Shown piece after piece: positions 262-64,000 of a stretch of 64,000 bases of DNA. Origin of the DNA: Perna viridis. Lineage: Eukaryota. Positions within the stretch are counted from its first letter, which is position 1. The number at the start of each line of letters is the position of its first letter. The notes below the pieces were generated by a model, which was not told the DNA's origin, did no database searches, and saw only the letters and a list, made by a program, of their open reading frames with translations. The position numbers were made by a program, and so were the translations under genes. The stretch spans positions 32,565,678 to 32,629,677 of the forward strand of contig CM074523.1 in the NCBI GenBank assembly GCA_037379345.1. Direction: 5' to 3'.

Positions 262-501
262 GTGATGTCTGTCCCATGGGTCAATACTGTCTGGAAGGGA
301 GCACTAATGGTACCTATTGTCCTCCCGGAACTTACCTCAATACAACAGCGAGCACCGTCCTGTCCGACTGTCACACATGTCTACAAGGAATGTATTGTGC
401 TGGGTATGGGAACCCTGCAGCATCTGGACCATGTAGCACCGGGTTCTACTGTCCCACTGGAATGAATGTATCAACACCTGGAGAGTACACTTGTCCTCAA
501 G
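262..501 (+). CDS. exon w1
   Basis: AG/GT, phase 1-1; GDVCPMGQYC..YTCPQ. Confidence 0.9.
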
Positions 502-3500
502 GTGAGGTGTTCAGTTGAAACCTAGCCACATCATACCAAACTTAAAACTGAAAGTTGATGTTTTTTTCCTGAACATGCTGTACATGAAAACTCTCCCCCT
601 TTTATTGGGAAATTTTGTTAATTTCTTGCAATATGTAGGTAAAAATAACCAATAGTAACTTGGAATCTCCCACTTTAAAATCTCATGATCCAAAGTTACA
701 AGGTATGTTGATTATAGATAGGTTTCACTGTTTATAGATTAATCAAAATTGTTACAAATGACAAAGACATTTTATATACATAATGCCATTACAGGTCATC
801 ATTGTCCCTCTGGAAGCCATGAGCCAATCAGATGTGATTCAGGAACATACCAAGATGAGACAGAACAGGGAAGCTGTAAGATGTGTCCTGCTGGTTACTT
901 CTGTGACAACACCAAGGCTCCAGTAGTACTGTACAATAGCTCTGTTTGTGCTCTAGGTTAGTATGATTTCAGAAAACATGCATTTTATTGTGGCATTATA
1001 TATTTCCAAATTGGTCCTACATACATCTTTTATGTGTTTAAAATCCTAAGATATATGTTGCAATTTTTCCTATGCAAATGATGCTGAAATCAACAAAAAC
1101 AGAAAAAAACTGTCTAAACAAGATTAAGAATAACCTAGAAAGAGTTGTACTTAAGGTTTGACAGAAATTTCATTCATTTCTCAACTATTATTTCATTTCT
1201 TTTGACAGGATATTACTGCCCTGATGGTACAAAGTATGACAATGAGTTCCCCTGCCCCAATGGGACGTATAGTAATGCCACAGGTCTACAGTTGGAGTCT
1301 GACTGTCTTTTATGTCCAGGAGGGTATTACTGTGATCAAACGGCCCAGACTGATTACACCAAAGTGTGTGCAGCAGGGTAAGCTTTAAAGAGTTCAAAGG
1401 ACATGTAGTCGAAATGTGCAAGGCTACTTACCTTGTGGTAGGGCTCCTTGACCTTAAATTTGTGTAGCTTTTTGCTCTCTTCAGTAAGTTAGAAGCCATG
1501 ATAGCTCTTGAAATTCCTTAACCCAGTTAAGTAAATGTTTGCTATGTGACTATTTATTACCTGATTTGTCCAAGTGAGAATTATGACATCCTATCGTCCC
1601 GATGTTGCCATGGAAGAATTTGTCTCTACAAATTTGATAAACATAAAAGTACTTTTATATGTGGGAACTAGTTTTCATGGTTTAGGGAAAAGATATCAGT
1701 TCATTGATTCTTAAATTTGTGGATTTGATAACTCTATTGTACAAACAAATGAAAAATTTCCTTTTCATGGTTTACCAGACCCACAAAAACCACAAAAATT
1801 GGACCCCAGGAATGATAATACTTTCACAGTACATTTTTTAGACATGATAAATTGTTCTCATTTTCATTCCTGCCACACATTTACTGCAAGTTTTGGAAAC
1901 TGGATATTTTGTCTTGTTAATGTTAAAAATACTGAGGGCTCTATGGAGATTTTATTTGCTTTCAGATATTTCTGTAAACAAGGTGCTATAACAGGAACAC
2001 CAAACCAAGGACCTGATGCCGATGAATGTCCCGCAGGTCATTACTGCCCCATACAAACAGCTGAACCAATCAAATGTCCCCAGGGAACTTACTCAAATGC
2101 CACCAAACTAAAAGCTGAGAGTGAATGCTCAAACTGTACTGCAGGTAATAAAGTACAAGTCTTTGTAAAAATCAGGCTATATAGGAACAATCTGAAACAT
2201 GTGTCAAGTTTTAACCAACTGACTGTATAATTTCACTTAAAGAAGTCTTCTATATTTAAAATAACCACTATTTGATCTCTGTATCACTAATATTACAATA
2301 TTAGATGTTTGAGTTTTTGAGTTATCTTCCTTATATTAAAATGTTCAGTTGTTTGTACCGTATTCTTCTGTGTATACCGCACACTTTTTTTCAACTTTTT
2401 CTTTGCTCCAGAAGAGGGATGCGCGGTATACACCATAACAATGAGTTTCTAGATTTTTTTTTTGGAGACGCAATTTTCGGGAATCAGAACCAGTCGTCAA
2501 CTAAAGACAACATCGAGCCATTGTATTTTTGAGAACAGTTTTATGTGAAATAAACAAATAAAGGTTTACTGCTATTTAATAGTTGTTTTATCCAACAATG
2601 CTGTTTCCTTGCATTTCATAGTTTGTACGAAAAACCATGAATAGCTTCTTATTGCTCTCTCAAATCAAGTTATCTAATTATAACTTCTTCACCTGTGTGC
2701 GGTGGAGCCTTAAATACACAATACCGGGAGTGCCAACCTGTCCTCGTGGCCATTGTCATTTAATTATCAAATAACAAAGGAGCAATTTAAAAGGTGAAAA
2801 AATTATTACTAATCCTTTAATCCGCTTGATGAACTGTTTCCAGATGTCATATATCAATACACAACTTGGCAAATTAAAACATCTTTTTATAAACGGCCAG
2901 ACTTGACGCCGTTGTTTTAGTGAATTACCTGATTTGTATTCGAACTGGAAATGTAAACATTTCAGCCGACTGAGATCCAATACATCACTATTTATAAACT
3001 ATTTGAATTAATAAATGGCTTGCAAATGCAGGGAAACACAAAAAATACTTCTATTTAAAAGATTAATGATGAAAAGATATGCATTTCGGGGAATTTACCG
3101 GAATCCTTTCATCTCAAAATGGTCTTCTGATGGTGATTTTTCCTCACTTCCCATTGCACGTTTTACACAGAAACTAACTTTTTTCGCCAATCTCCCTTGC
3201 CACGAAGGGGGTGCGCGGAATACACAGATGCGTGTAATACATGGAAGAATACGATATTTCAATGAAATTCATAACTAATTTTACCAAGTGATTTAGATAA
3301 TCTTGTCTTTTTTCTTGATTCTGATGGTACAAATACTCAAATAGTACTGTCAAAGATGTGGGATATTTCAAACCATATTTCATCCACTGCCTGACTCTTA
3401 CAAAGTCTTGACACTTAAGTATTTTTAAGTATTTTCTTTTTTAAATTATTGAATATGACAGGTGAAAATGATTTACAATAAGAGGGTGGATAAGAACATT

Positions 3501-6500: not shown

Positions 6501-9500
6501 CTGCCGAGCTAAGATGTTTTTCATTTCCAGGGAAAAACTATAATTACAAACTTAAATTCTTCATTATGCTTGTACATACAAACAAACAAACATTCATCTC
6601 TATAAGTAGGTGTATGAAAAAAAATGTTTTTGAACTTATGAGGTAATCCTTCACCTTCAGAGGTTGTAAATAGTTACTTGTGCCTCTCTTTTTTCTTAGG
6701 TGACCAGAACTGAACCAAGCCACAAAACTTTAAAATCAATGAAATATTTATCTTATATTTTAGGTGGCTACTACTGTGATATCAATGGACTCTCAGAACC
6801 AACTGGTCCATGTGCACCAGGCTACTACTGTGATGGTGGCTCCACTACAGCAATGCCATCTGGTGTTGGTGGAAATCAGTGTACCACAGGAAGTTACTGT
6901 CCTGAGGCCTCAGCTAATCCAACACCTTGTGACCCTGGATATTATTGTGCTAACAATCTGTTGAATGAAACTTCAGGAAAATGTTCACCTGGTTACTATT
7001 GTACAAGTATGGCTACTGTAGCTAATCCCACAGATGGAACAACAGGTACCAGTCACTCATTACTTTTAACATATTATTTTGAAGTTGGATTATGTGCTTT
7101 GCTATATTCTAATACAACAGTACATGAAACATTTTAATGTTATATCTTTTGACTTCTTTATATTCTGCCAAATGAAGGTACCGTCGAACCTTGATATGTC
7201 AAACTCGAAAGAGTTGAAATCTTGGATAACTCGAACTAATTGACTAAAAAAATAATTGTGAATTATTTTAAGGTAACCTTGTTATTTTTGTAGGCAATAT
7301 TTGTCCTGAGGGTGCTTATTGTCCTGAGGGAAGTCCCTCCCCAACACTCTGTCAAGCTGGTTACTACCTCAACAGCACAGGAAATGATGATGTCAGTGAC
7401 TGTATTCTCTGTACTCCTGGAAGTTACTGTGACGGCAGCGGAAACAGTCAACCCGATGGGCTATGTAGTGCAGGGTGGTATTGCCCAGGTGGACAAGATA
7501 CAAATATGCCCACTGGATTTAATTGCACTTTAGGTCACTATTGCCCAGAGGGAAGTTCAGCACCTCTACGCTGTGCCTCTGGAACTTACCAAGATGAGTT
7601 AGGACAGTCAGACTGTAAGGGTTGTCCAGCAGGATATTATTGTGATAATGTAATGGATCCTGTTATACTATATAATGACTCATATTGCCCAAAAGGGTAC
7701 TATTGCCCAGAGAACACAACAATGTCATCTCAATACCCTTGTCCTGCAGGAACATTCAACAATGTTACCCATCAGATCAGTGAATCAGATTGCCAGCAAT
7801 GCTCTGGTGGGCAATACTGTGACCAGCCAGGACTAAGTGAACCTGTTGGAGCATGCATGCCTGGCTATTTCTGTGACTTTGGAGCCAACAGTTCCACTCC
7901 CTCTCAACCACCTAATGCAGATATTTGCCCAGAAGGATTTTATTGCCCGTCAGGCACAGTTACATCCCAGTCCTGCCCACCAGGCACATTTAACCCAACC
8001 ACCGGACGACAGAGTGTGGATGAGTGTACCAACTGTACATCAGGGTTCTATTGTCCCAACTACAATCAGACTGTTGCTACAGATCTCTGTCAAGCTGGTA
8101 CGTAAATTGAAGTGTCACAATAACTTTTTATTTAATCATAAGAAAAATGCAATTTTATTTGCCGGTTATTTTAGATTTCTGTATCACAATTCTGATGTTA
8201 TTTTTTTTTCACAAATAAAAATATCGTTGCATTTAATTTGTATTGAATATATCACAGATTTTAAAAGTTTAAGAAAAATAAAAAAAGAAATTAAAAAAAA
8301 TGTTGGTATTATTTGGGTTTTAATTAGTGAAAATGTTCTTTTCCAGGATACTACTGTCCAAGCAAAGCTGATATAGCTGCATTCATTGTATGCCCAGCTG
8401 GGTCCTACTGCCCAGCAGGAAGTGGTTCACCCAACCTGTGTCCAGCAGGAACATTTTCTAACCAGACAGAATTGACAGCTGAAGCACAGTGTGCAAACTG
8501 CACTGGTGGAAACTACTGTCCTAATCCAGGTCAATATCTCTCTTACTTGTACTCTTAGGCCATAGTTTTTATTTTTATTTTTTTTTAACCCTTTCACCCT
8601 AAATTCTGACAAACTGGAAAAAATAAAATTGATATTGTTGAATTTATTTTATTTTTTCATGCAGAAAAAATAAAATTTTTGATAAAGAAAATTACTCCAT
8701 AAAAGAATCTGAATTTTGATATTTTTGATATAGTAATTTGTTGCACATTGTTTTTCAAATTCAAATCTTTTCAAGTTAAAATATCTACAACTGTCACGTA
8801 TCTAGTGAAATAAGAAAAATACATACTTTTGATCTTTGCAAGCTATGTTATGAAGAAGAAAAAACTGCAGTTGGATATTTTTTTCCCTCCTGCCCCAAGG
8901 TTTCATCAAAAAGTTTTGTTAAACTTAAAATATAATAACTATAGCCTTATGTTCATAAAGTTATCTCCCTTAACACATTACATAATCTGTGCTCATTATA
9001 GGTTTTTTACAGTCTCTATATCCCACCACTGCTACCAAAATATTATTGTTTTAGCAAAGTCTTTCTGATTACAGGAATGACAGATACAGGATATCCATGT
9101 TGGGGAGGATATTACTGTCCAACAGGGATTTCAGAACCAAATCCAGTAGGATATATCTGCCCACAAGGCATGCATTGCCCAAATGGTAGTGAAATTTACA
9201 AGGTGATTTAAATTGTGACTTATTTGTGCTTTAGAATTACAATACATGTACTTTACAATGACTCATATTGCCCAGAAATTTACAAAAAATAGTTTTTAAG
9301 TATGGAAACAGGCATGAACGAAGAAAATCTATTTTAAAAATTCAAACCAAATTAGCAAGCCCTTTTTCAGAACACATGTTTTTTTCTCTCTAACACTGTA
9401 AGATTGAAAAGAAAATTTACCAGTAGCTTTCAAGCCAATCTTTAGTTTGTCTGTTTTCTTTGTAAACTCAGTAGGCTTTAACTTCCAATTAAAACTTTAA

Positions 9501-12500
9501 TAAAATATTTCATGGATCCATTAAATTTTAGCAATGTACTGATGGAACCTACACTAGTACAGCAGGAGCCAGCAGCTGTGATGTCTGTCCTCAGGGATTC
9601 TACTGTCTACCAGTAATCCTTGCTAACTCAACTGACAACAAGAAAGACTGCCCTGCAGGGTATTATTGTCCACAAGGTAAGAGTTGTCTCCTTTTAAATG
9701 ATGTTTTTTTTTTTTATCAACCATTATATTGAAAACAAGAGGATGCAGTTGTCCTCAAGAAAAGCTTTAGCAGACACTTAATATGTATACATCTCCTGGC
9801 CGTACACATTACTTTAAGGATCTATAATTACCTTCTTGAATAGCAATTTCAAATTTTCATATTTTGCTGTATAACCTGCAGATTTAGTAAGTGCAACCTT
9901 TTAATGTTAGAAGTAATATTTGAAAATAATTTTAACAATGCTTTTTTATAAAAATCTGCAAGTGGGGATTTCTTTATGGTGCTTAATTTTTTTGCCTTAC
10001 ATATCTTTAGTTAGTTCATTTTTTAGTCCATATTTAAATTATAATTTTTTAATTTCATTTTGTACTTTTTAAGACCAATTGTATTATTTCATTACTTGAG
10101 AACCATATATAGTTTTTGTTTATTGGGCTTAATTAATCCAACAGGAACAGGGAGTGACTGGATGCCCTGTCCAGCTGGATCTTACTCCAATACTCTGAAC
10201 TTATATGAAGAGAGCCAGTGTTTAGCTTGTCCTGCTGGGAAATTCTGCCAAGGAACACACCTGACAACAGATAGTGGAGAATGTACTGCAGGTAAACTAA
10301 ATAACTGATTGTTAACAGAGATTTCTTCAAGTCATTTACTGCAAATTTAGATAAATTAAATTAAATACCAATATTTAAAAATACAGTGGAGCCTCTGTAA
10401 ACCGGCTGCCCATGGGACCAAAGAAATCGGCTGGTTTTCAGAGGTGCCGGTTTTCGGAGGTTCCGGAAATTTTCGTATCCGTTCCGTATATGGATACCGG
10501 AAGTACAATGTTATTGATCTTGTGATCGATCCGATCCTATTGATGATTATCTGATTGCACTGTTTGTATGTTTCTACACACATTCTTTGATAGGTATTTG
10601 TGTATGTTTGTGTTCAAATCAAGAATAAACGTAAAAGTTGTATTGTTGTTTTTAATTAAAGAGTAATCGTACTGTTCAGTATTTTTATATTGTTGACAGT
10701 TTAGTGATGCGTGGCGTAGTTTATTGACATTGTCTTTGATCTGTGTAAAGTTTTTAAGGTAAACTAGTCACCGATGCCTTTGTTGACTAAAAATACTAAA
10801 AGATGAAGATGTGACTGAGAAACTAAAGAAACAAATCAAAAGTGAAATAAAAATGTCTCTAAACCAAAAACCCGACTAAATACCAAGGTATCATGACAAT
10901 GAATCCATATAGACAGTATTTTACCCTTCTCTTTCTTATTGTTGCAGACAACAGGGTCAGTCTGAGTTCAAGATATAGATAAAGAATACTATGTCCCTTG
11001 TACATTTACTTCATATATACGTTCACTTTTCAATTGCACTCCATAAAAAAAAACCTATACATGTACAATCATATTTATTCAGTGACATTTAATAACATAG
11101 ATAAAGATTCTCATAAATAAAGCACTAATAAAATTGAAAACAAGTTTTACAGTTAATTGTACATTTAATCATCAGTCTAACAAATTACACTTTAAAAAAG
11201 TCTACAACTGATACCTGTTTCTTTTTCAAACACCTTTGAAGAATTGCGGTTTCACTTTTAGAGTTGAGTTCTTGCGCAACACTGAGAAAATTGTCGTCTT
11301 TTACAGTTGCAAATTTCATTAAACGTTTACTGAATGCTGTTATCTCATCTAATGTCAATTTGGGTTCAGATGTATCAATTTCTGCTGAATCATCTTCGGA
11401 CTCGCTTGCATTATCATTTGTTGCTACGGATGAATGTGTTTCCACAAGATTCTTTTCCCACTCGTCACTGTCATCTTCAATCGGAATGTTCTGATCAAAT
11501 TCGATTAAGGTTTCACGGTCAACGAGCGCAACTGAACTTATCTTGGCGAGCTGATTAAGAGGAATATCGTCGTCTTCGTCGTTGGAGTCGCTTTCATTTG
11601 ATTTAACGTCGGTTGTGACGGGAAAACCAGATGACATGAGGCACTTAGAAATTGTATCTACACGGGTTTCTTTCCACGATTTGTTGATCCAATGCACGGC
11701 ATCTAAAACATTTATTTCTTTGCAAAGTTCAGAAACGGATTCAACTTGGTCTATCTTAGCGACTAAACTTTTCATCATACGGTTACGGTACCGAGCTTTG
11801 AAAGCCTTGATAATGCCTTGATCTAGCGATTGTAGGTGCGAAGTCGTATTTGCTGGTAAAAATTTCAAAGTTACGTTGTTTAATTTCAAATCTTTAGCAT
11901 AAGATGAGGCGTTGTCTGAAAACATGAGAACGTTCTTTAGAATTTTTTACACCTTTGGAAGATTGCCCTTTGGCTGAAAGTGTCTTGTCTGGTAACGCAC
12001 GATAGTATAGACCAGTTTCGTCACAATTAAAAATGTTACAAGGTTCAAAATCTGAGCAAATTTCTGGAATACGCGAGCGATATTCATCAACAGTTTCTAC
12101 ATTTACACCGGCACTTTCTCCACTAACGGTAAACGCTTTAATAGCATGGCGACTCTTAAATTTTTCTAACCACCCGTTTGAGGCTTTGAAATCGGAAATG
12201 TCTAACTGACTGGCAAATTCTAAGGCTTTGCTTTGCAAAATAGGCCCGGAAATCGGAATAGCCTTGTCTCGAGCTTGACGGAACCAGTCCCACATCAGAT
12301 CGTTCAAATTGTCATGTTTACTTTTGTTACCAAATCTAAATTTCTTCAAATTGTCATTGTTATCATAATTTGCAAGATATTCTGATTTTCTCTTTAAAAT
12401 ATCGGAAACGGTCGTTTTTCCTACACCGAATTTTTCACTTAACGATTTCTGAGATGGTTTTGGAAAACTTTCAGATTCTTTGATTAAATTAATTTTGTCT

Positions 12501-15500
12501 TCTAGCATTAATTCAATAGTTTAGCCGGCGGTTTTGACATTTTAGCAGTAATTTTAGATTAAACCAGAAGCAATGCAAATTTCAGAATGATTTGAAAATT
12601 GTAACACTGGCTATTTAAGGAAAACCATTTTCAAGCCATAACTTTAATTTCATTTACTCATTTTATAATAGAACACAAGCGGTCGGCACAACCTATTTTG
12701 AAGTTTTCATTTTCTGTTTTAATAGAACACAAGCGGTCGGCACAACATATTTTGAAGTTTTCATTTTCTGTTTTAATAGAACACAAGCGGTCGGCACAAC
12801 ATATTTTGAAGTTTTCATTTTCTGTTTTTACAGAATCGTTTGAAAATGTGGTTATCAAAAAATTTTTTAAATTTAACATTTGTTAAAAAGTTAATTACAT
12901 ATAGGATCATGGTTATTGCCCTCATTATCTGTGATAATTAATGAATAAAAGAGTGTCACTCCTTGTTAATGCCAATCAAGATTGGTGTTAGCCTTTTGAA
13001 GTACTGATTTATTGATCTTACCGTGATTGACATGTTTACAACATGTTACACGGCTCATTGATTTTACTTGTCGGCAAACTTTTCACCTGTTTTTGGAGGT
13101 TAATTTTTACAAAGAAATGGGTTTTGGGACCGAATTTTGCAGCCGATGTTCGGAATTCAGAGGGGCCGGTTTAGGGAGGAAATTTTTACTTAATTATATA
13201 GGGGAAAATTCCGGACCAAAACTAAATGATCGGTTTTCGGAGGATTCCGGTTTTCAGAGGGGCCGGTTTAGGGGAGTTCCACTGTAACCCTTAAAAATGA
13301 TAAAAACATGATCATTTTTTATACACATGAAATGCATCTATTTCTCATTTGCTTGTATCATCAGTTATCTTTACAATTTTATCTTTTTCCATTGTAGGGT
13401 ACTACTGTACTTCTGGAGTAGACAGACCAATGCCAGGAGCTGCTAACGATACATCAGCAGCCAACTGCTCATGCCCAACAACAACATACTTCACCGGTGT
13501 TGGAGGAATTTGTCCGATTGGTCACTACTGTCCTTCTGGGACGGACATTCCAAAGGAATGTGTTGCTGGAAGTTATACTGATATGATTGGACAGTCTGAG
13601 TGTCAGATTTGTCCTGCTGGCTTCTATTGTCTTACTAATGCTACTGAGTATTTATCAACACCTTGTCCTATAGGTATGTATGAACTGAAACAATTTTATT
13701 CTGTGGTACTTAGAAAATTTGATGAAGTACAAATTCAAATGAGAATGGTTGATTTGTAAAGGGAAGAAAAGAAAGCCTGTTGCTTTTTCTATTTTTTTTT
13801 ACAACCTCTGTGGTATAGGGGTAGCAGGTTATCACTTCTGTGTGATATGGTAACGAACTTGCTTAGATTATTGGATTATTAACAATCTGAATAAACTCAA
13901 TTGATCAAATATTGTGGAAGTACTTTAATTTATGGATGCCTATTTACATGGGTTAGGGAAGAAACACTAGTGCATGGATTCTCAAATTGTGGTTTTGAGG
14001 TTTTCAGTATACACATCAGTGGGATTCTCCTTTTGTTGGAAACCAAATTTCGTGGTTTGACCTACCCACAAAAACCACGAAGATTAGTCTTCAACAGTAG
14101 TAACAGTAGTGAACAATAGTACTCATGGTACTTTCACAGTATGTTTTTGTCCTGAAATTCATGTAACATCTGCCAAAAGATGTTAAAACTATGATCAAAC
14201 AAGCAATACATCAAAATTATGTATTAGAATTGACTACAGAAAATATATGAATAATAACTTCTTGGTACAAGTCTTATCAGCTACATAGCCCTGTTTCTTC
14301 TTTGGTTTTTATACAAATACATTGGTTCTTGATTTGAAAATTCATTAGCATTCACTATTACATGTATCTTTAAAAGTAATTGTACCATTCAGGAAACTAC
14401 TGTCCAAATGGAACTCAACATGGTAGCCAGTATCCCTGCCCTGCTGGTACCTACAACCCAACATCTCAGAGAACATCTCTCGGGGATTGCATTGACTGCC
14501 CAGGTGGTAAATATTGTCAAGGAGACGGTAACTCAGCACCAACAGGAAACTGTTCTGCTGGCTGGTACTGTTCTGGTGGTGCTGATAGTCCTAATACAAC
14601 TACTAATGGAGGGAAATGTCAACCTGGATACTACTGCCCTGAAGGTAACAAGAATAAAGTATAATTCCAGTTAAGAATCATGCAAAAGCTGACTAGAAGT
14701 GATTCATATATATCTTTTGCAAAATTTTTGGGACTGTTCAAAATGCCTAAAAGAGTATGTTTTTAAAAATAGAAGTGTTAGTGAAAACTGGGTTTAGTGG
14801 ATATTTACTGCTAAATACAAAAATGTATGGGAAATTTTCCTGCTGAACCTTGCTTGAATATTTCCAGATTATTAGCACACACTCTTATATGAAATATTCT
14901 AAAAGAGATCAGATCTGAAGAAATCGTGTGAATAGAAAAATTGAGTTGAGGCAACATCATCCATCATCTACACACATCAATCTGTATAAAGTTTTTTTTC
15001 TCTCTGACCTTTATGATACTCCCCATTACTGTTTGGAATTATCCATTAAGTGTGTGTGAGTGAAACATGAGCTTTATTATTTTACCTAGGTTCCTCTGAT
15101 CCACAACCTTGCCCAGGAGGTCAGTACTGCCAGTTTGAAGGTTTAGACACACCCACTGATAACTGTTCAGCTGGATACTACTGTATGGCAAGGGCTGTAA
15201 CTCCAACACCAACAGATGGCAGCACTGGTGATCGATGTCCAGCTGGACACTATTGTATTTCTGAGTCTTCCTACCCAACACCATGCAGTCCTGGAACATA
15301 TAGTGGTAGTGTGGGTAACACACAGGCATCAGACTGTGTTCAATGTAGTTTTGGAGAATATTGTGGAGAATATAACCTTACCACAACTAATGGTAGGTTC
15401 TCTTACAGCTAATACAATGATTTTGTTCACTGGATAGAGTTGGTCACCTGATGAACTTCCTAAGGTAGTTAAATGGACAATTGAGAAAGTGATTTAAGCT

Positions 15501-63500: not shown

Positions 63501-63736
63501 TGTTTAGCATCTCTAGCTCAGCAAAGTGCTTTATCTATTGTCCAAGCCTATTCGATGTTGGTATGATATACATTTATATCATTATTATAGCTGATGCAGT
63601 GGACCTAAAGAGTGATGATTTCTGGGACTATGACAAACAGGTCGACTTAGAAGCCTTCAACACCAGGGCACTGTACGATACCTTGTCTAAACAGTCCAAC
63701 AAGGTTACACAGACAATTGGCAGACAGAAGGATGAG
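262..63736 (+). CDS. Giant cysteine-rich GCC2/GCC3 (ephrin-receptor-like) repeat single-pass membrane protein; partial multi-exon gene, 74 exons in window
   Basis: 74 exons with AG/GT boundaries and compatible phases, total 16,742 nt = 2 + 3x5,580. Recurrent CPxG(Y/F/H)YCPxG and CPxGT(Y/F)N motifs and many NxS/T sequons. TM helix WAIIFIILGAALLAMVIMMIALVLF followed by RK. Both ends lie outside the window. Confidence 0.93.
795..956 (+). CDS. exon w2
   Basis: phase 1-1; GHHCPSGSHEP..SVCAL. Confidence 0.9.
1209..1377 (+). CDS. exon w3
   Basis: phase 1-2; GYYCPDGTKYD..VCAAG. Confidence 0.9.
1966..2144 (+). CDS. exon w4
   Basis: phase 2-1; YFCKQGAITG..SNCTA. Confidence 0.9.
2358..3254. mobile_element. 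non-autonomous Tc1/mariner-superfamily element (CCGTA termini, Tc2-like)
   Basis: TA|CCGTATTCTTCTGTGTAT ... ATACATGGAAGAATACGA|TA inverted termini; more CpG than the flanks; no transposase. Confidence 0.7.
3663..3932 (+). CDS. exon w5
   Basis: phase 1-1; GYFCERLALL..GLCKE. Confidence 0.9.
4442..4557 (+). CDS. exon w6
   Basis: phase 1-0; GYYCPDGTVNRE..RNNTE. Confidence 0.88.
4853..5090 (+). CDS. exon w7
   Basis: phase 0-1; NNHTHAVECYPC..LTTWS. Confidence 0.88.
5431..5664 (+). CDS. exon w8
   Basis: phase 1-1; GKCAAGHWCMQG..DQCPQ. Confidence 0.9.
6287..6451 (+). CDS. exon w9
   Basis: phase 1-1; GYYCPQGTANY..ISCT. Confidence 0.9.
6764..7045 (+). CDS. exon w10
   Basis: phase 1-1; GGYYCDINGL..DGTT. 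Confidence 0.9.
7294..8097 (+). CDS. exon w11 (largest, 804 nt)
   Basis: phase 1-1; GNICPEGAYC..DLCQA. Confidence 0.92.
8347..8529 (+). CDS. exon w12
   Basis: phase 1-1; GYYCPSKADI..YCPNP; weak GTCAAT donor. Confidence 0.87.
9075..9202 (+). CDS. exon w13
   Basis: phase 1-0; GMTDTGYPCWGG..SEIYK. Confidence 0.88.
9532..9676 (+). CDS. exon w14
   Basis: phase 0-1; QCTDGTYTST..YYCPQ. Confidence 0.88.
10145..10291 (+). CDS. exon w15
   Basis: phase 1-1; GTGSDWMPCP..GECTA. Confidence 0.9.
11185..12540 (-). pseudogene. Tigger/pogo (CENP-B-like) transposase pseudogene: HTH_psq, CENP-B HTH and DDE_1-type domain
   Basis: ORF 12508..11894 (SQKSLSEKFGVGKTTVSDILK; FKASNGWLEKFKSRH; IFNCDETGLY) and ORF 11925..11185 (DNASS..FLPANTTSHLQSLDQGIIKAFKARYR) are in different frames. 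A probable true ATG at 12540 is also out of frame. Confidence 0.9.
12667..12828. repeat. 54-bp tandem repeat x3 in the transposon 5' region
   Basis: AATAGAACACAAGCGGTCGGCACAAC.. at 12667, 12721, 12775. Confidence 0.95.
13398..13673 (+). CDS. exon w16
   Basis: phase 1-1; GYYCTSGVDRP..TPCPI. Confidence 0.9.
13912..14139. mobile_element. MITE with (C/T)TGTGRAAGTA..TACTTTCACAG termini and TA flanks; second, 5'-eroded copy at ~1646-1829
   Basis: Both copies share CCCACAAAAACCAC and end in TACTTTCACAG|TA. Confidence 0.6.
14393..14644 (+). CDS. exon w17
   Basis: phase 1-1; GNYCPNGTQH..YYCPE. Confidence 0.9.
15090..15392 (+). CDS. exon w18
   Basis: phase 1-1; GSSDPQPCPG..LTTTN. Confidence 0.9.
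15912..16160 (+). CDS. exon w19
   Basis: phase 1-1; GNCSAGYYCP..YYCPP. Confidence 0.9.
16176..17050 (+). mobile_element. Helentron-associated (HINE/DINE-1-like) non-autonomous element
   Basis: 5' AGGTGAGCT then CGTCTGTCGTTG; tandem ~300-bp core starting TCTTCTCCTCTGAAACTACTT; 3' CAGGTGAG plus GC hairpin AGGCTCCTGGGGGCCT before a T-tract; related copies at 28740-30636. Family name is from recalled structure, not a search. Confidence 0.7.
17078..17362. mobile_element. Tigger-type MITE
   Basis: TA|CAGTTAAACCTGTC ... GACAGGTTTCACTG|TA with internal degenerate AAACCTG/AAACCCTGAAT repeats; eroded relatives near 21615-21770 and 42165-42305. Confidence 0.75.
17513..17876. mobile_element. Tigger-type MITE interrupted by a Kolobok-like MITE
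   Basis: TA|CAGTGAAACC ... GGTTCCACTG|TA. Confidence 0.7.
17590..17803. mobile_element. Kolobok-like MITE, copy 1 (nested)
   Basis: 31-bp TIR GGAGGTAGACCTAGGGTAAGGGACATAACTC; flanks TTGA / TTAA. Confidence 0.8.
17950..18171 (+). CDS. exon w20
   Basis: phase 1-1; GTERGNQWPC..NICPQ. Confidence 0.9.
18812..18958 (+). CDS. exon w21
   Basis: phase 1-1; GSFCPLGTTT..LLDNE. Confidence 0.88.
19240..19471. mobile_element. ~230-bp MITE (CATACCTGTTAACC-type termini), copy 1; other copies at 40885-41134 and 42694-42935
   Basis: Three alignable copies with inverted termini ATACCTGTTAACC..GGTTAACAGGTAT; no clean TSD seen. Confidence 0.7.
19647..19762 (+). CDS. exon w22
   Basis: phase 1-0; GPCNAGYYCV..VRCPE. 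Confidence 0.88.
20025..20354. mobile_element. unclassified MITE with 19-bp TIRs
   Basis: AATAGGGTATGTAAGTCTC ... GGGACTTACATACCCTATT. Confidence 0.6.
20467..20744 (+). CDS. exon w23
   Basis: phase 0-2; GTFNPYTGLN..CPAGW. Confidence 0.9.
21127..21551 (+). CDS. exon w24
   Basis: phase 2-1; YCQQGTVIGQ..YYCLQ. Confidence 0.9.
21896..22394. repeat. 45-bp minisatellite, ~11 copies
   Basis: AATGTTGTAATAGATAATAGCATTGTGACATC(A/G)TTACTCATGACA. Confidence 0.97.
22782..22985 (+). CDS. exon w25
   Basis: phase 1-1; GAEDYAATPC..GKCQA. Confidence 0.9.
23218..23388 (+). CDS. exon w26
   Basis: phase 1-1; GWYCTLNSTS..NNCTA. Confidence 0.9.
23919..24201 (+). CDS. exon w27
   Basis: phase 1-2; GYYCILKASA..PTEYN. 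Confidence 0.9.
24507..24757 (+). CDS. exon w28
   Basis: phase 2-1; CPIGHYCPEG..FNNRT. Confidence 0.9.
24938..25075 (+). CDS. exon w29
   Basis: phase 1-1; GLQTVSDCTP..STPNQ. Confidence 0.9.
25496..25685 (+). CDS. exon w30
   Basis: phase 1-2; GDDANICPEG..PCSEG. Confidence 0.9.
26205..26386 (+). CDS. exon w31
   Basis: phase 2-1; YYCEIASNHS..YCNDT. Confidence 0.9.
26768..27008. repeat. 23/24-bp minisatellite, 10 copies
   Basis: CCAATCAGATGACATGTTATAT(C/GT). Confidence 0.97.
27097..27321 (+). CDS. exon w32
   Basis: phase 1-1; GLFTYTGDCD..EEVIQ. Confidence 0.9.
27405..27790. repeat. interspersed repeat, probable retroelement-derived fragment; related pieces at ~4170-4330 (inverted), ~24300-24400 and ~44136-44195
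   Basis: Shared GTAATCAAGG..AACCAAGGTTATAGCGGTAATCAA..GAATGTAATC and CAGGTGC..C....AG.GTAAGC motifs. Confidence 0.55.
28117..28454 (+). CDS. exon w33
   Basis: phase 1-0; GNSTSGYRLC..PGTYQ. Confidence 0.9.
28740..30636 (+). mobile_element. compound array of HINE/DINE-1-like Helentron elements (28740-29472 and 29615-30636, with a core fragment between)
   Basis: Both start TTTAGC(C/T)CACCTG and end CAGGTGA..+GC hairpin; internal tandem cores of ~160 bp and ~310-325 bp. Confidence 0.72.
30853..31018 (+). CDS. exon w34
   Basis: phase 0-1; DQENQARCKP..FNNLT. Confidence 0.9.
31377..31691 (+). CDS. exon w35
   Basis: phase 1-1; GQANDSACEP..PTGTG. Confidence 0.9.
32290..32469 (+). CDS. exon w36
   Basis: phase 1-1; GDRCPPGYYC..GDCDA. 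Confidence 0.9.
32663..32995 (+). CDS. exon w37
   Basis: phase 1-1; GYYCPEGQIV..CSDCL. Confidence 0.9.
33010..33290. repeat. 33-bp minisatellite, ~9 copies, just 3' of the exon w37 donor
   Basis: TTTATTGTACCCCTACTCTTTATGTGCTATTAC. Confidence 0.95.
33788..34021 (+). CDS. exon w38
   Basis: phase 1-1; GGYYCTSGTT..TPCTK. Confidence 0.9.
34204..34592 (+). repeat. interspersed repeat with two ~160-bp cores, probably a second HINE-like family
   Basis: GGAAGTTA..GCCCTTGGACTTAGAAAA duplicated at ~34343 and ~34503; ends GGGGGACAT. Confidence 0.45.
34617..34904 (+). CDS. exon w39
   Basis: phase 1-1; GSYCNDTALT..YYCPE. Confidence 0.9.
35185..35320 (+). CDS. exon w40
   Basis: phase 1-2; GSDQHNEIIC..ICPNG; donor GTTAGT is duplicated downstream. 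Confidence 0.87.
35286..36407 (+). repeat. 61-bp minisatellite derived from the 3' end and donor of exon w40
   Basis: unit ACAGGACTGGGGAAT(G/A)GCAGTGTGAC(G/A)TCTGTCTGGATGGGTTAGTACATGTATATACTTC; 14 full units, 4 short variants, plus degenerate end copies. Confidence 0.97.
36851..37001 (+). CDS. exon w41
   Basis: phase 2-0; FYCLPENVTA..TNIYM. Confidence 0.88.
38105..38285 (+). CDS. exon w42
   Basis: phase 0-1; LTHCTDCDGG..IGGHT. Confidence 0.88.
38900..39239 (+). CDS. exon w43
   Basis: phase 1-2; GYGDVCPPGY..AGNCS. Confidence 0.9.
39693..39871 (+). CDS. exon w44
   Basis: phase 2-1; AGWYCTEAST..GICLA. Confidence 0.9.
40163..40342 (+). CDS. exon w45
   Basis: phase 1-1; GYYCNISAFI..VICTK. Confidence 0.9.
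40557..40858. mobile_element. fold-back element / MITE with ~130-bp inverted arms
   Basis: AATTTGGAATTATTTTGGA..GGTTAGTCATGCCGTCATGACTAAGGGA mirrored by TCCCTTAGTCATGCCAGCATGACTAACC..TCCAAAATAATTCCAAATT. Confidence 0.75.
41611..41783 (+). CDS. exon w46
   Basis: phase 1-0; GKYCGSYGLE..SGTYQ. Confidence 0.9.
42373..42550 (+). CDS. exon w47
   Basis: phase 0-1; DEPIQSTCKT..FNNRT. Confidence 0.9.
42913..43097. repeat. 30-bp minisatellite x6 grown from a MITE right terminus
   Basis: TGTTCCAAGGTTAACAGGTATGATTCAGAC. Confidence 0.9.
43731..43868 (+). CDS. exon w48
   Basis: phase 1-1; GLNSTHECSE..TTPSL. Confidence 0.9.
44464..44619 (+). CDS. exon w49
   Basis: phase 1-1; GSLADRCSAG..YCNET. Confidence 0.88.
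44953..45201 (+). CDS. exon w50
   Basis: phase 1-1; GLTAVVGQCL..GPCKE. Confidence 0.9.
45600..45752 (+). CDS. exon w51
   Basis: phase 1-1; GYYCPTKSSV..SVCPE. Confidence 0.9.
45927..46121 (+). CDS. exon w52
   Basis: phase 1-1; GYYCIPELSI..GQYCE. Confidence 0.9.
46541..47043 (+). CDS. exon w53
   Basis: phase 1-0; GTNLTSPTGD..SDASQ. Confidence 0.9.
47706..48054 (+). CDS. exon w54
   Basis: phase 0-1; PTLTGGQCLA..GQCDA. Confidence 0.9.
48258..48416 (+). CDS. exon w55
   Basis: phase 1-1; GFYCPPGQTQ..KICTE. Confidence 0.9.
48590..49091. repeat. 54-bp minisatellite, ~9-10 copies with shorter variants
   Basis: AGATATATATAGGTCT(G/A)CAGAAGACATACTCCACAATAGAAGCAGATATACAGC. Confidence 0.96.
49672..49903 (+). 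CDS. exon w56
   Basis: phase 1-2; GYYCDNSIEP..LCFPG. Confidence 0.9.
50058..50871. mobile_element. non-autonomous hAT element, copy 1
   Basis: TIRs CAAGAGTCCAGAAA / TTTCCGGATCCATG; 8-bp TSD CTCCCAAT / CTCCTGAT. Confidence 0.85.
51098..51297 (+). CDS. exon w57
   Basis: phase 2-1; YYCNGSTIDP..ASSKN. Confidence 0.9.
51594..51764 (+). CDS. exon w58
   Basis: phase 1-1; GHSLPCDAGY..PSVGL. Confidence 0.88.
52280..52405 (+). CDS. exon w59
   Basis: phase 1-1; GECLPCLEGT..IPCPI. Confidence 0.88.
52378..52543 (+). repeat. 43-bp tandem copies of the exon w59 3' end plus donor
   Basis: TATAATGATGG(C/T)ATACCTTGTCCAATAG|GTGAGTAAAAT x4, the second copy degenerate. Confidence 0.92.
53078..53278 (+). CDS. 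exon w60
   Basis: phase 1-1; GSYNPHEGLS..YYCEE. Confidence 0.88.
53950..54207 (+). CDS. exon w61
   Basis: phase 1-1; GTVSATLCPR..VACPP. Confidence 0.9.
54395..54720. repeat. degenerate ~31-bp minisatellite x~10 upstream of the exon w62 acceptor
   Basis: ACTCACTGTTCCATTTTACACATACAGATTT. Confidence 0.85.
54747..54959 (+). CDS. exon w62
   Basis: phase 1-1; GKYQPYSGSI..KACPA. Confidence 0.9.
55077..55947. mobile_element. non-autonomous hAT element, copy 2
   Basis: TIRs CAAGGGTCTGGAAA / TTTCCGGATCCATG; 8-bp TSD TTTAATAC / TTTAACAC; colinear with copy 1. Confidence 0.87.
56059..56269. mobile_element. Kolobok-like MITE, copy 2
   Basis: TTAA|GGAGGTAGACCTAGGGTAAGGGAC ... GTCCCTTACCCTAGGTCTACCTCC|TTAA; RR..YY termini with TTAA duplication. 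Confidence 0.85.
56341..56481 (+). CDS. exon w63
   Basis: phase 1-1; GVYCTGGRIT..YYCPE. Confidence 0.9.
56842..57202 (+). CDS. exon w64
   Basis: phase 1-2; GTTDKLTCVP..NGTYR. Confidence 0.9.
57586..57875 (+). CDS. exon w65
   Basis: phase 2-1; ADVAAADLSD..NMTDA. Confidence 0.9.
58183..58437 (+). CDS. exon w66
   Basis: phase 1-1; GAIEPIMCPL..YLCPA. Confidence 0.9.
58672..58895 (+). CDS. exon w67 (end of Cys-repeat stalk)
   Basis: phase 1-0; GYYCPQNSSS..GRDFQ. Confidence 0.9.
59453..59614 (+). CDS. exon w68
   Basis: phase 0-0; ESDRTCPCGA..YCSNY. Confidence 0.87.
59750..59988. repeat. ~41-bp minisatellite x6
   Basis: GTATACTCAGGGTTGTGTAATACCCGTCGTCACAGCCAC. Confidence 0.9.
60259..60447 (+). 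CDS. exon w69
   Basis: phase 0-0; VCKAGGYIGF..NDSIS. Confidence 0.87.
60585..60958 (+). CDS. exon w70 (contains RRRLL)
   Basis: phase 0-2; HEITSDNLLT..PVYDI. Confidence 0.87.
61328..61490 (+). CDS. exon w71
   Basis: phase 2-0; NNLFNTNGNF..VNKKM. Confidence 0.87.
61705..61893 (+). CDS. exon w72 (transmembrane helix)
   Basis: phase 0-0; YIRVMAQNSV..WAIIFIILGAALLAMVIMMIAL. Confidence 0.88.
62360..62533. repeat. 33-bp minisatellite x5
   Basis: TTGATCTGTCAGCAATCATTCAATCAGCGGTCA. Confidence 0.9.
62940..63138 (+). CDS. exon w73 (cytoplasmic tail start)
   Basis: phase 0-1; VLFRKYGWTK..LAILD. Confidence 0.87.
63591..63736 (+). CDS. exon w74 (cytoplasmic)
   Basis: phase 1-0; ADAVDLKSDD..RQKDE. 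Confidence 0.86.
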
Positions 63737-63861
63737 GTATATTTAGAGCTAAAATATGAGACTGGTAACAATAGAGATCTTTAGGGAAAATTAAAAAATT
63801 GGTATTTGAGTGAAATATGCAGCAACTATGGTTCAACTGTACAAAATATATATAGGCAGAT

Positions 63862-64000
63862 CAAGGTTTCGGACAGCCCATGCTGGTCATTTTATCAAAT
63901 TTCAGCAGACGTTCGTGTCAGTATTTTACATGCTCATATCGAAAATAAACTTTAACTAATAAAAAAAAACATTTATGCAGTTATTTTATGATAAATATTG
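63862..64000. mobile_element. non-autonomous hAT element, copy 3 (cut by window edge)
   Basis: CAAGG..GACAGCCCATGCTGG.CATTTTATCAAA.TTCAGCAGACG matches the left end of copies 1 and 2. Confidence 0.8.

What the first reader, a model, noticed from the sequence alone, without database searches (positions are those of the whole stretch)
262..63736. Giant (>5,580 aa) uncharacterised single-pass receptor-like protein built from GCC2/GCC3 Cys repeats
Seen: 74 in-phase exons giving about 5,100 aa of CPxGxYC repeats, a unique juxtamembrane region, one TM helix and a cytoplasmic tail, with both termini still outside the 64-kb window. Known: this repeat type occurs in short runs in SCUBE, SVEP1 and ephrin receptors, and in long runs in protist surface proteins. 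Inference: an intact, very long, N-glycosylated, disulfide-stiffened surface filament or sensor. From memory, not verified, the block YPVYD..LFNTN..FDYGGFR.L..F.YQF..PGVYVF resembles a poorly studied family that includes zebrafish si:ch211-286b4.4, mouse Gm9195 and ciliate/oomycete/apicomplexan GCC2-GCC3 giants. That would make it an ancient, possibly cilium- or gamete-associated protein.
Basis: partly seen in the sequence, partly recalled or inferred. Interest (0 to 1): 0.75.

Follow-up and report, generated by a model that had tools for sequence, protein, structure and literature searches.

The report
Giant conserved single-pass surface protein gene
The window holds the middle of one expressed gene for a roughly 9,800-residue membrane protein, a member of an unstudied family found from protists to mammals, with a huge cysteine-rich stalk outside the cell and a long tail inside.

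Summary
The + strand carries 74 frame-compatible exons: 65 from my exon-chain model and 9 fixed by spliced transcript contigs. About 5,000 residues are CPxGxYC-type (Pfam Ephrin_rec_like) repeats, followed by a unique region, one membrane helix and the start of a tail.

The gene is larger than reported. It has about 130 exons over about 122 kb, an mRNA of at least 31.4 kb, and at least 9,760 codons. The cytoplasmic tail is about 2,330 residues.

The region next to the membrane, modelled through a close contiguous proxy, is a cupredoxin fold with no conserved histidine or methionine for a copper site. The conserved domain near the C-terminus is a zincin (metalloprotease-like) fold whose H-x-x-x-H motif has no catalytic Glu in 0 of 47 aligned relatives.

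The same outside/membrane/inside layout occurs in animals and five protist lineages, all named "uncharacterized".

- The window gene belongs with the long-tail subfamily (fish si:dkey-103g5.4, rodent Gm32742).

Function is inferred. I favour a mechanical or adhesive transmembrane linker. No cilium or gamete link was tested.

The locus is present twice, about 393 kb apart and roughly 99.4–99.8% identical. One withheld follow-up report overlaps this stretch.

The parts
262..57875 (+). 65 modelled exons (14,667 nt) of diverged Ephrin_rec_like / CPxGxYC cysteine repeats; extracellular stalk, middle part
   Evidence: Exon-chain model. PF07699 is above Pfam's cut-off in 7272-8102 (24.1 bits) and 38875-39240 (27.8 bits). 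Motif count is 153 against 3.2 in shuffles. The summed exon length agrees with the transcript contig length. Individual borders were not seen in RNA.
58181..58895 (+). Last two repeat exons (58181-58437, 58669-58895; the joints allow a few bases of slide)
   Evidence: GT..AG joints in spliced contigs of 4 of 4 runs; open frame; PF07699 at 20.0 bits, below the cut-off.
59451..60446 (+). Two exons (59451-59614, 60259-60446) of a family-specific cysteine-rich 'neck'
   Evidence: RNA joints; no Pfam family; tblastn matches to vertebrate subfamily-A proteins at 33-56% identity.
60584..61489 (+). Two exons (60584-60958, 61328-61489) of the juxtamembrane cupredoxin-like domain with no conserved His or Met (YPVYD...FDYGGFR...PGVYVF)
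   Evidence: RNA joints. Profile search gave 712 representatives at E<=1e-3. AlphaFold2 model of the closest contiguous relative P0002 (38% and 66% identical to the two exons): pLDDT 81. Plastocyanin Z 9.8, rmsd 2.3 over 87 residues; Foldseek probability 1.00. Among nearly invariant columns there is no His or Met, and the only Cys is C64 in an inner strand.
61704..61892 (+). Exon with a conserved Cys / PDW stalk and the single transmembrane helix (about 61828-61890, WAIIFIILGAALLAMVIMMIA)
   Evidence: RNA joints; translation; the only hydrophobic segment among 130 exons; basic residues follow in the next exon.
62939..63738 (+). First two cytoplasmic tail exons (62939-63137, 63590-63738); the tail goes on for 20 more exons to a stop at about +83,680, outside the window
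   Evidence: RNA joints, and a loose end that continues at L013:1491 in frame. Tail model, colinear with the Lingula, Dreissena and Plakobranchus proteins to the last exon.

Best explanation
The window is the central 64 kb of one gene of about 122 kb and about 130 exons. The gene is transcribed into an mRNA of at least 31.4 kb and encodes a type-I membrane protein of about 9,800 residues.

Outside the cell:
- about 7,000 residues of old, diverged Ephrin_rec_like (TNFR-like) disulfide repeats with many N-glycosylation sequons, which would make a long stiff stalk;
- a family-specific Cys-rich neck;
- a cupredoxin-fold domain, with no conserved His or Met for a copper site, directly above the membrane.

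Then comes one transmembrane helix.

Inside the cell is a tail of about 2,330 residues:
- a conserved membrane-proximal part with 13 short '(D/H)PxTGxxxP(I/V)' -type units by my reading of the exon translations;
- about 1,200 residues of very charged, probably helical or coiled-coil sequence;
- a zincin-fold domain that keeps H-x-x-x-H but never the catalytic Glu;
- a short C-terminal end.

Shown here: the exon structure near the membrane, the splicing, the open frame, the two folds, and conservation of the whole layout from protists to vertebrates.

Inferred: it acts as a mechanical or adhesive transmembrane linker. The glycosylated rod reaches far from the cell surface. The tail ties it to cytoskeletal or trafficking partners. 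The Glu-less zincin domain serves as a binding module and not as a protease.

My confidence is about 0.9 for the architecture and family placement and about 0.35 for the linker function. The figure below blends the two.
For: One gene:
- Single spliced contigs of 27,140, 31,423, 11,897 and 21,226 nt occur in 4 of 4 runs from 4 studies. They have 8 GT..AG joints across 58181-63738 and zero depth in intron bins.
- The frame is open across all 9 exons and into the next exon at L013:1491.
- Modelled exon sums of 20,767 nt upstream and 6,628 nt downstream fit the contigs' 21,099 nt and about 8,400 nt.
- The tail model is colinear with Lingula P0187, Dreissena P0294 and Plakobranchus P0307 at 34-74% identity, up to the same last exon.

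Conserved layout:
- The proteins found with the juxtamembrane profile also carry the C-terminal domain. Examples are Chromosphaera P0037 (49% identity, E 1e-37), Fabomonas P0120, Kipferlia P0119, Entosiphon P0145, the crinoid P0007, and vertebrate subfamilies A and B.
- A divergent paralog on C3 has both domains 13.7 kb apart.

Folds:
- C-terminal exon model: pLDDT 95.3, pTM 0.88. Best structural matches are abylysin Z 7.7 (rmsd 2.0 over 81 residues), Wss1 7.4, selecase 7.1 and Spartan 6.7. Nearly all of the top 40 rows are zincins. Foldseek's top rows are zincin-type too (selecase, jannalysin, ImmA/IrrE-like regulators), at weak E-values.
- 0 of 47 aligned rows have Glu after the first His.
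- The cupredoxin evidence is listed under parts.

Other points:
- Single pass: one hydrophobic segment among 130 exons.
- Old array: median best exon-to-exon identity is 48%.
- Tail composition: E, K, R, D and Q make up 0.42-0.62 of the residues in 11 exons.
Against: - No experiment or localisation bears on function. The linker idea rests on architecture and analogy only.
- The N-terminus and signal peptide were not found, so type-I topology is inferred from the repeats, the sequons and the basic residues after the helix.
- Exon borders for 65 of the 74 window exons are modelled. Two tiny modelled tail exons were wrong and were replaced using the RNA loose end. Exon 35185-35320 and three identical 57-nt upstream 'exons' are doubtful.
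- The runs are only guessed to be RNA, and contigs cannot prove a single molecule.
- The zincin matches have Z below 8, which the tool calls middling, and Foldseek E-values are 0.01 or weaker.
- Two His and conserved Asp residues remain, so a metal site or an unusual activity is not excluded.
- The cupredoxin model was made on a proxy (P0002), not on the window's own two exons.
- 'Coiled coil' is read from composition and was not computed.
Confidence: 0.55

Rival explanations
1. It is a cilium-, flagellum- or gamete-surface protein. On this reading the stalk is part of the ciliary or sperm surface coat, and the tail couples to transport or axonemal structures. This is a more specific version of the linker reading and not its opposite.
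For: All six named protist hosts are flagellates or have flagellated stages; that is my own knowledge, not a call. The names are Chromosphaera, Fabomonas, Kipferlia, Albugo, Andalucia and Entosiphon. One preprint passage lists the subfamily-B gene si:ch211-286b4.4 among 14 genes that are up in zebrafish testis versus ovary (10.1101/650218, passages only).
Against: No presence/absence profile against cilia was made. Names were obtained for only 30 of the 150 listed hits, which are themselves drawn from 712. The testis hint concerns the sister subfamily and is a list entry. Tissue of the runs used here is unknown because their labels are coded. Most sampled protists are flagellates anyway.
Confidence: 0.2
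2. It is a signalling receptor or enzyme. The ectodomain binds a ligand, and the tail's zincin-like domain is catalytically or metal-dependently active, with Cys, Ser or Thr taking the place of Glu. Alternatively the protein is processed by regulated proteolysis.
For: The two His of the motif are kept in 38 and 36 of 47 rows. The residue between them is almost always small or nucleophilic (C 22, A 9, T 8 of 47). Asp at the +13 position is kept in 33 of 43 rows.
Against: The general-base Glu that defines zincin peptidases is absent in 0 of 47 rows. Bird subfamily-B rows have lost both His (NTVAW) while the domain persists. No kinase, phosphatase, death or other signalling domain was found by Pfam in 10 tail segments.
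Confidence: 0.15
3. It is an artefact: two or more neighbouring genes merged by contig assembly, or a decaying pseudogene array of repeat exons.
For: The tool warns that a contig across two genes shows no single transcript. Some modelled exons are doubtful.
Against: The frame runs unbroken through every junction tested. The same fused layout occurs in independent genomes and transcriptomes, including Trinity transcripts of Fabomonas and Entosiphon. Only 9 of the 258 differing alignment columns between the two genomic copies fall in 16,570 nt of exons, where about 67 would be expected at random.
Confidence: 0.03

Closest known systems
Vertebrate uncharacterised proteins named si:dkey-103g5.4 (fishes), 'Predicted gene 32742' / Gm32742 (rodents) and RGD1562811 (rat), plus unnamed LOC entries in frogs, reptiles, birds, bats and ruminants ('subfamily A' here)
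   Same: They share the Cys-rich neck, the cupredoxin-like domain, the single membrane helix, the conserved membrane-proximal tail, the long charged tail and the C-terminal zincin-like domain. tblastn matches cover about 15 tail exons.
   Different: Annotated vertebrate models have only about 110-870 residues before the cupredoxin-like domain. Paddlefish P0223, for example, has a signal-like start. The window gene has about 7,400 residues there. On the tree of the C-terminal domain alone, the window gene's clade and subfamily A are not joined with support.
Vertebrate giants named si:ch211-286b4.4 or auto-named zonadhesin-like / SCO-spondin-like ('subfamily B'), and this genome's own paralog on contig C3
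   Same: They share the giant PF07699 ectodomain, the cupredoxin-like domain, the membrane helix and the zincin-like domain.
   Different: The tail is short (about 480 residues in frog P0041). The motif is degraded to NTVAW in birds. The C3 paralog, not the window gene, groups with them (support 95/91). They are 36-38% identical to the window gene in the shared domains.
Protist giants: Chromosphaera perkinsii (6,410 and 7,076 aa), Fabomonas tropica (7,499), Kipferlia bialata (6,264, partial), Entosiphon sulcatum (4,886), Albugo laibachii (4,903) and Andalucia godoyi (3,358)
   Same: The order is the same: a long ectodomain, the cupredoxin-like domain, then 1,700-4,000 residues, then the zincin-like domain in 5 of the 6 lineages. 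PF07699 is found in Chromosphaera P0037 and in Albugo.
   Different: The zincin-like domain was not detected in Albugo and was only weak in Andalucia. Pfam finds no PF07699 in Andalucia or Entosiphon.
Eph receptors and other PF07699 carriers (SCUBE, SVEP1)
   Same: They share the Ephrin_rec_like cysteine repeat type.
   Different: Pfam found no ephrin-binding, fibronectin, kinase, SAM, CUB, sushi or VWA domain in the exons tested. The repeat number is far higher here.
Apicomplexan cysteine repeat modular proteins (CRMPA/CRMPB)
   Same: They are large proteins with GCC2/GCC3 repeats on a protist surface or secretory pathway (bioRxiv 10.1101/2022.02.24.481622, passages).
   Different: That preprint states that they have 9 transmembrane domains and that the family is apicomplexan-specific. 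The window protein has one hydrophobic segment. No sequence comparison with CRMPs was made here.
Minigluzincins (abylysin, selecase, jannalysin) and WLM/SprT proteases (Wss1, Spartan)
   Same: The fold of the C-terminal domain matches: helix, three-stranded sheet, motif helix and a further helix.
   Different: No Glu in the motif in 0 of 47 rows. Sequence identity is 10-16%. No sequence-level match to any PDB chain was found.
Plastocyanin-type cupredoxins and the ephrin ectodomain
   Same: The fold of the juxtamembrane domain matches: plastocyanin Z 9.8, ephrin-A1 about Z 5. Like ephrins, it shows no conserved copper ligands and sits next to the membrane. The cupredoxin-like fold of ephrins is stated in PMC6993872 (passages).
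   Different: There is no conserved His or Met, and no conserved Cys where a ligand would lie. The ligand set His, Cys, His, Met is recalled. The match to ephrins is much weaker than to plastocyanins.

Membership tests
Pfam PF07699 Ephrin_rec_like (GCC2/GCC3) repeat proteins | A match to the Pfam model at or above the gathering score (23.1 bits) | tested here: met
   Exon 7272-8102 scores 24.1 bits and exon 38875-39240 scores 27.8 bits. Four other repeat exons match below the cut-off and the rest of the 17 segments scanned do not match. Exon-by-exon scanning weakens whole-protein scores.
Uncharacterised 'cupredoxin-like / TM / zincin-like' giant family (si:dkey-103g5.4, Gm32742, si:ch211-286b4.4 and protist giants); features as defined here | Juxtamembrane domain with YPVYD...FD.G.F...G.YVF | tested here: met
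   Present in exons 60584-60958 and 61328-61489. The profile finds 712 representatives at E<=1e-3 and 399 at E<=1e-10. Reciprocal tblastn of these proteins hits the two exons.
Uncharacterised 'cupredoxin-like / TM / zincin-like' giant family | A single transmembrane helix within about 60 residues after that domain | tested here: met
   WAIIFIILGAALLAMVIMMIA in exon 61704-61892 is the only hydrophobic segment among 130 exons. The PDW...TM consensus is shared in alignment A5.
Uncharacterised 'cupredoxin-like / TM / zincin-like' giant family | A C-terminal cytoplasmic domain with the H-[CSTA]-x-[AS]-H motif | tested here: met
   The exon at window +80,999..81,390 (L014:7001-7393) carries HTLAH. 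phmmer gives E 3.5e-66 to Plakobranchus and 3.3e-41 to Chromosphaera. Motif tally.
Subfamily A (long tail) versus subfamily B (short tail) | A tail of about 1,900 residues or more sharing the membrane-proximal PxTGxxxP(I/V) region | tested here: met
   Subfamily-A proteins (P0136, P0047, P0042, P0060, P0176) match tail exons from 62940 to about 71700 and at 81004-81393. The tree of the C-terminal domain excludes the window gene from the subfamily-B clade but does not join it to A with support.
Zincin metallopeptidases (HExxH) | A catalytic Glu directly after the first zinc-binding His | tested here: not met
   The window has Thr. 0 of 47 aligned family rows have Glu. Only the fold is shared.
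Blue-copper cupredoxins | Copper ligands His, Cys, His, Met in the C-terminal loops (ligand set recalled) | tested here: not met
   The nearly invariant columns of the 93-row alignment are C64, P81, Y83, D96, F100, F121 and G125. There is no His or Met, and the Cys lies in an inner strand. The window's last strand reads PGVYVFYLSSDVNKK, without Cys or His.
Eph receptor tyrosine kinases | An ephrin-binding domain, fibronectin III repeats and a tyrosine kinase domain | tested here: not met
   None was found by Pfam in 17 window segments and 10 tail segments.
Apicomplexan CRMPs | A conserved core with 9 transmembrane domains (10.1101/2022.02.24.481622, passages) | tested here: not met
   One hydrophobic segment among 130 exons. 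No direct sequence comparison was done.

The most novel reading that the evidence does not exclude
This family may be an ancient transmembrane linker, dating back to the last eukaryotic common ancestor, that nobody has studied. On this reading a sub-micrometre glycoprotein rod is coupled through one helix to a megadalton-scale cytoplasmic arm. That arm ends in a protease-derived binding domain. The family would have been kept from excavates to mammals because it anchors or moves a surface structure such as the ciliary or gamete coat. A bolder side reading is that its membrane-proximal cupredoxin-like domain (no conserved copper ligands) next to Eph-type cysteine repeats is the pool from which animal ephrin/Eph modules were drawn.
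Probability: 0.25. Interest if true: 0.8.

Novelty: new variant of a known kind. Interest (0 to 1): 0.62.

Why it matters
Giant repeat-built surface proteins are known. This one belongs to a family with a fixed three-part layout present in animals, including rodents, bats, ruminants, birds and fishes, and in at least five distant protist lineages. Every database name I saw is 'uncharacterized' or an automatic mislabel such as zonadhesin-like, SCO-spondin-like or 'Reticulocyte-binding protein'.

The two fold assignments give the first handles for experiments in tractable species such as zebrafish si:dkey-103g5.4 and mouse Gm32742. These are a cupredoxin fold with no conserved copper ligands outside the cell and a Glu-less zincin fold inside.

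The locus also shows that annotated lophotrochozoan models (2,693-4,184 aa) are probably truncated versions of a gene of about 9,800 residues.

If the family is tied to cilia or gametes, it would add a conserved membrane component to those systems.

Tried and rejected
- The ESM Atlas look-ups on the juxtamembrane exon and the C-terminal exon gave only bacterial glycosidase beta-domains and phage hypotheticals at 0.90-0.95. I treated these as uninformative.
- PDB sequence searches gave nothing at E<1 for either domain profile or for a PxTG-repeat exon.
- Weak Pfam hits below their cut-offs were dismissed as chance or as generic Cys-repeat resemblance. These were Imm42, GBD_IRG7_N, Lustrin_cystein, NCD3G and TNFR_c6.
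- The search for homologous proteins with the Chromosphaera C-terminal region returned only itself and Lingula. This reflects the word-index limit, not absence.
- I looked for the start codon and signal peptide between -52 kb and -38.6 kb. No candidate stood out, so the 5' end stays open.
- A search for a super-repeat period among exons found none.
- Literature searches by repeat name and by gene or locus names found only list mentions and no study of the family. I saw passages only for 10.1101/650218, PMC12528612, PMC6993872 and 10.1101/2022.02.24.481622, and search listings only for the rest. Supplementary tables, which might hold expression values for si:ch211-286b4.4, Gm9195 or Gm32742, are closed and were not seen.
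- I did not obtain names for 120 of the 150 listed profile hits, so no phyletic profile was made.
Full report
**What is in the window**

The window has 31-39% G+C. Cys-rich open segments lie mainly on the + strand: 73 against 28 on the - strand. I trained a codon score on the repeats and chained GT..AG-bounded, frame-compatible exons across the window and its flanks.

The chain has 65 exons between 262 and 57875 (14,667 nt). Contigs of four RNA-like runs from four studies were laid on 58001-64000. Each run holds one spliced contig, of 27,140, 31,423, 11,897 and 21,226 nt. Each contig has the same 8 GT..AG joints, and depth in the intron bins is zero. The joints define exons 58181-58434, 58669-58893, 59451-59614, 60259-60446, 60584-60958, 61328-61489, 61704-61892, 62939-63137 and 63590-63738.

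The reading frame is continuous over all nine exons.

The repeat exons hold 4,990 whole codons. They are 10.9% Cys and carry 140 sequons. They hold 153 CPxGxYC-type motifs, against a mean of 3.2 in shuffled peptides. Pfam's Ephrin_rec_like (PF07699) passes its cut-off in two exons and is sub-threshold in others. The spliced model was searched exon by exon.

**Extent of the gene**

The window is G000:C13:32565678-32629677. Repeat exons continue on the + strand for about 38.6 kb upstream.

Downstream, the contigs' loose end after 63738 matches L013:1491 and continues the frame. A second exon chain, trained on tail ORFs, reaches a stop codon at about +83,680. Its two tiny first exons contradicted the RNA loose end and were replaced by an exon starting at 65491.

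The tail model is colinear with the Lingula, Dreissena and Plakobranchus proteins at 34-74% identity. The match runs through every larger exon up to the same last exon.

From -38,590 to +83,680 the model has 130 exons and 29,298 nt. The longest contig has 21,099 nt upstream of 58181, against 20,767 nt modelled. It has about 8,400 nt downstream of 63738, against 6,628 nt of coding sequence, which leaves a 3' UTR of about 1.8 kb. The first exon or exons and the signal peptide were not found.

**Anatomy**

- *Repeat array.* The repeat exons are old. The median best exon-to-exon identity is 48%, and there is no super-repeat period.
- *Neck.* After the array come two exons of a family-specific Cys-rich neck.
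- *Membrane helix.* One exon carries a conserved Cys, PDW and the only hydrophobic segment of the whole model.
- *Tail, membrane-proximal part.* It starts with charged exons. By my reading of the exon translations printed, 13 short units of the type HPQTGHVLPIQG / DPVTGLPTPVEV follow. The script's strict [DNHE]P.[TS]G pattern matched 6 of them.
- *Tail, charged part.* Eleven exons follow in which E, K, R, D and Q make up 0.42-0.62 of the residues. I read this as helical or coiled-coil from composition only.
- *Tail, conserved domain.* A conserved 130-residue exon follows, then four short exons.

Pfam finds nothing in the unique ectodomain exons or in ten tail segments.

**Relatives**

In this genome each unique exon has an identical copy about 393 kb downstream. 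A divergent paralog (36-38% identity) lies on C3. It carries both the juxtamembrane block, there in one exon, and the C-terminal domain, 13.7 kb apart.

I built a profile from the paralog exon and the two window exons, kept as separate rows (A1). It was searched against 1.84 billion representative proteins. It found 712 at E<=1e-3 and 399 at E<=1e-10.

Named hits include:
- a crinoid, frogs, turtles, a turkey, sturgeons and a cobra;
- the protists Chromosphaera, Fabomonas, Kipferlia, Albugo, Andalucia and Entosiphon.

All are 'uncharacterized' or automatically named.

I ran tblastn of the 186 proteins then held against the locus. The same proteins also match the tail exons and the C-terminal domain. 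Examples are Chromosphaera (49% identity, E 1e-37), Fabomonas (39%) and the crinoid (44%). phmmer of that exon against 381 proteins confirmed the domain in Kipferlia and Entosiphon as well, but not in Albugo.

Two word-indexed searches gave names for two vertebrate subfamilies:
- Long tail with a short ectodomain: si:dkey-103g5.4, 'Predicted gene 32742', RGD1562811 (118 hits).
- Giant ectodomain with a short tail: zonadhesin-like, SCO-spondin-like, and si:ch211-286b4.4 in Betta (75 hits).

On a tree of the C-terminal domain (34 rows, 131 columns) the window gene groups with the Plakobranchus, Dreissena and Lingula proteins (support 96/95). The C3 paralog groups with the crinoid and subfamily B (support 95/91). 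The link between the window clade and subfamily A is unresolved there. That link rests instead on the shared long tail.

**Folds**

The C-terminal exon was folded with a 47-row alignment and gave pLDDT 95.3 and pTM 0.88.
- A Foldseek-independent search ranks abylysin (Z 7.7, rmsd 2.0 over 81 residues), Wss1 (7.4 and 7.1), selecase, jannalysin, Spartan, YbeY and aminopeptidase catalytic domains on top.
- Foldseek's top rows are selecase, jannalysin and ImmA/IrrE-like regulator domains, then Wss1, at weak E-values.
- The Z values are in the range the tool calls middling. The match list is almost purely zincin, and the conserved H-x-x-x-H sits on the matching helix.
- The catalytic Glu is absent in 0 of 47 rows (C 22, A 9, T 8 at that position). 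Bird subfamily-B rows have lost both His.

The window's juxtamembrane domain is split by an intron, so I folded the closest contiguous relative. This is P0002, 38% and 66% identical to the two exons, with a 93-row alignment. It gave pLDDT 81 and pTM 0.74. It is a cupredoxin fold: plastocyanin Z 9.8 (rmsd 2.3 over 87 residues), many plastocyanin and amicyanin rows at Foldseek probability 1.00, and ephrin at about Z 5. No His or Met is conserved, and the only nearly invariant Cys lies in an inner strand.

**How it may work**

Shown here: one expressed gene, single-pass topology features, the two folds, and a layout conserved across eukaryotes.

Inferred: a stiff, glycosylated, disulfide-rich rod is held in the membrane. 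It is coupled by a very long tail to intracellular partners. The Glu-less zincin domain acts as a binding module.

Comparable giant surface anchors such as Drosophila Dumpy and Chlamydomonas FMG-1B are recalled from memory, not from a call. A cilium or gamete role is possible but untested. The only hint is a testis-up gene list that contains the subfamily-B gene. A catalytic or metal-dependent role for the tail domain is not excluded.

**Literature**

I ran searches by repeat name and by twelve gene or locus names. They found only list mentions and no study of the family. CRMPs, the best-studied protist GCC2/GCC3 proteins, have 9 transmembrane domains according to passages of 10.1101/2022.02.24.481622. 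PMC6993872 (passages) states that ephrins have a cupredoxin-like fold and that PF07699 is of ancient eukaryotic origin. Supplements were closed.

**Verdict**

The family is real and ancient, and the recalled zebrafish name falls in the sister subfamily. Gm9195 and ciliate or apicomplexan members were not verified, and function remains inferred. The scan's index lists one withheld follow-up report overlapping this stretch.

Noticed in passing
window 1-64000 and flanks; second copy at G000:C13:32899168-33052940: At least 154 kb, including the whole gene, is present twice on the same contig, about 393 kb apart. Window versus copy 2 shows 258 differing alignment columns. Only 9 of them lie in 16,570 nt of modelled exons. 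At 60869 the window has T, copy 2 has C, and the spliced contigs of all 4 runs have C. This is either an uncollapsed haplotype or a very recent duplication.
   Followed up: partly
window 11185-12508, minus strand: Two adjoining ORFs carry DDE_1, HTH_Tnp_Tc5 and CENP-B_N domains. This is a broken pogo/Tc5-like DNA transposon inside the 10291-13398 intron.
   Followed up: partly
window 35325-36406 and 52378-52544: A 61-nt minisatellite lies next to a doubtful low-scoring exon (35185-35320), which holds 5 of the 9 exon differences between the two copies. A 43-nt x4 array repeats an exon end together with its GT donor. Both agree with the scan's earlier notes on exon-boundary duplications.
   Followed up: partly
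G000:C3:13000695-13014810 (L020, L023): A divergent paralog (36-38% identity) carries the juxtamembrane block in a single exon, a membrane helix, and the zincin-like domain only 13.7 kb away. It groups with the vertebrate si:ch211-286b4.4 subfamily.
   Followed up: partly
window about -34424 to -34076 (L009/L010 region, upstream of the window): Three modelled 57-nt exons, 146 nt apart, are 100% identical to one another. They are either a micro-exon array in a tandem repeat or a model artefact.
   Followed up: no
related proteins P0211, P0215, P0220, P0225, P0033: Several bird and turtle gene models fuse subfamily-A sequence with ankyrin repeats and are named NF-kappa-B inhibitor zeta. This suggests that NFKBIZ is the neighbouring gene there and that the models are merged.
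   Followed up: no
window 863-1001 of the query window:63000-64000, i.e. about 63868-64000: A 120-130 nt element at the window's end has dozens of copies at 81-86% identity on many contigs. It is a dispersed short repeat in the intron after exon 63590-63738.
   Followed up: no
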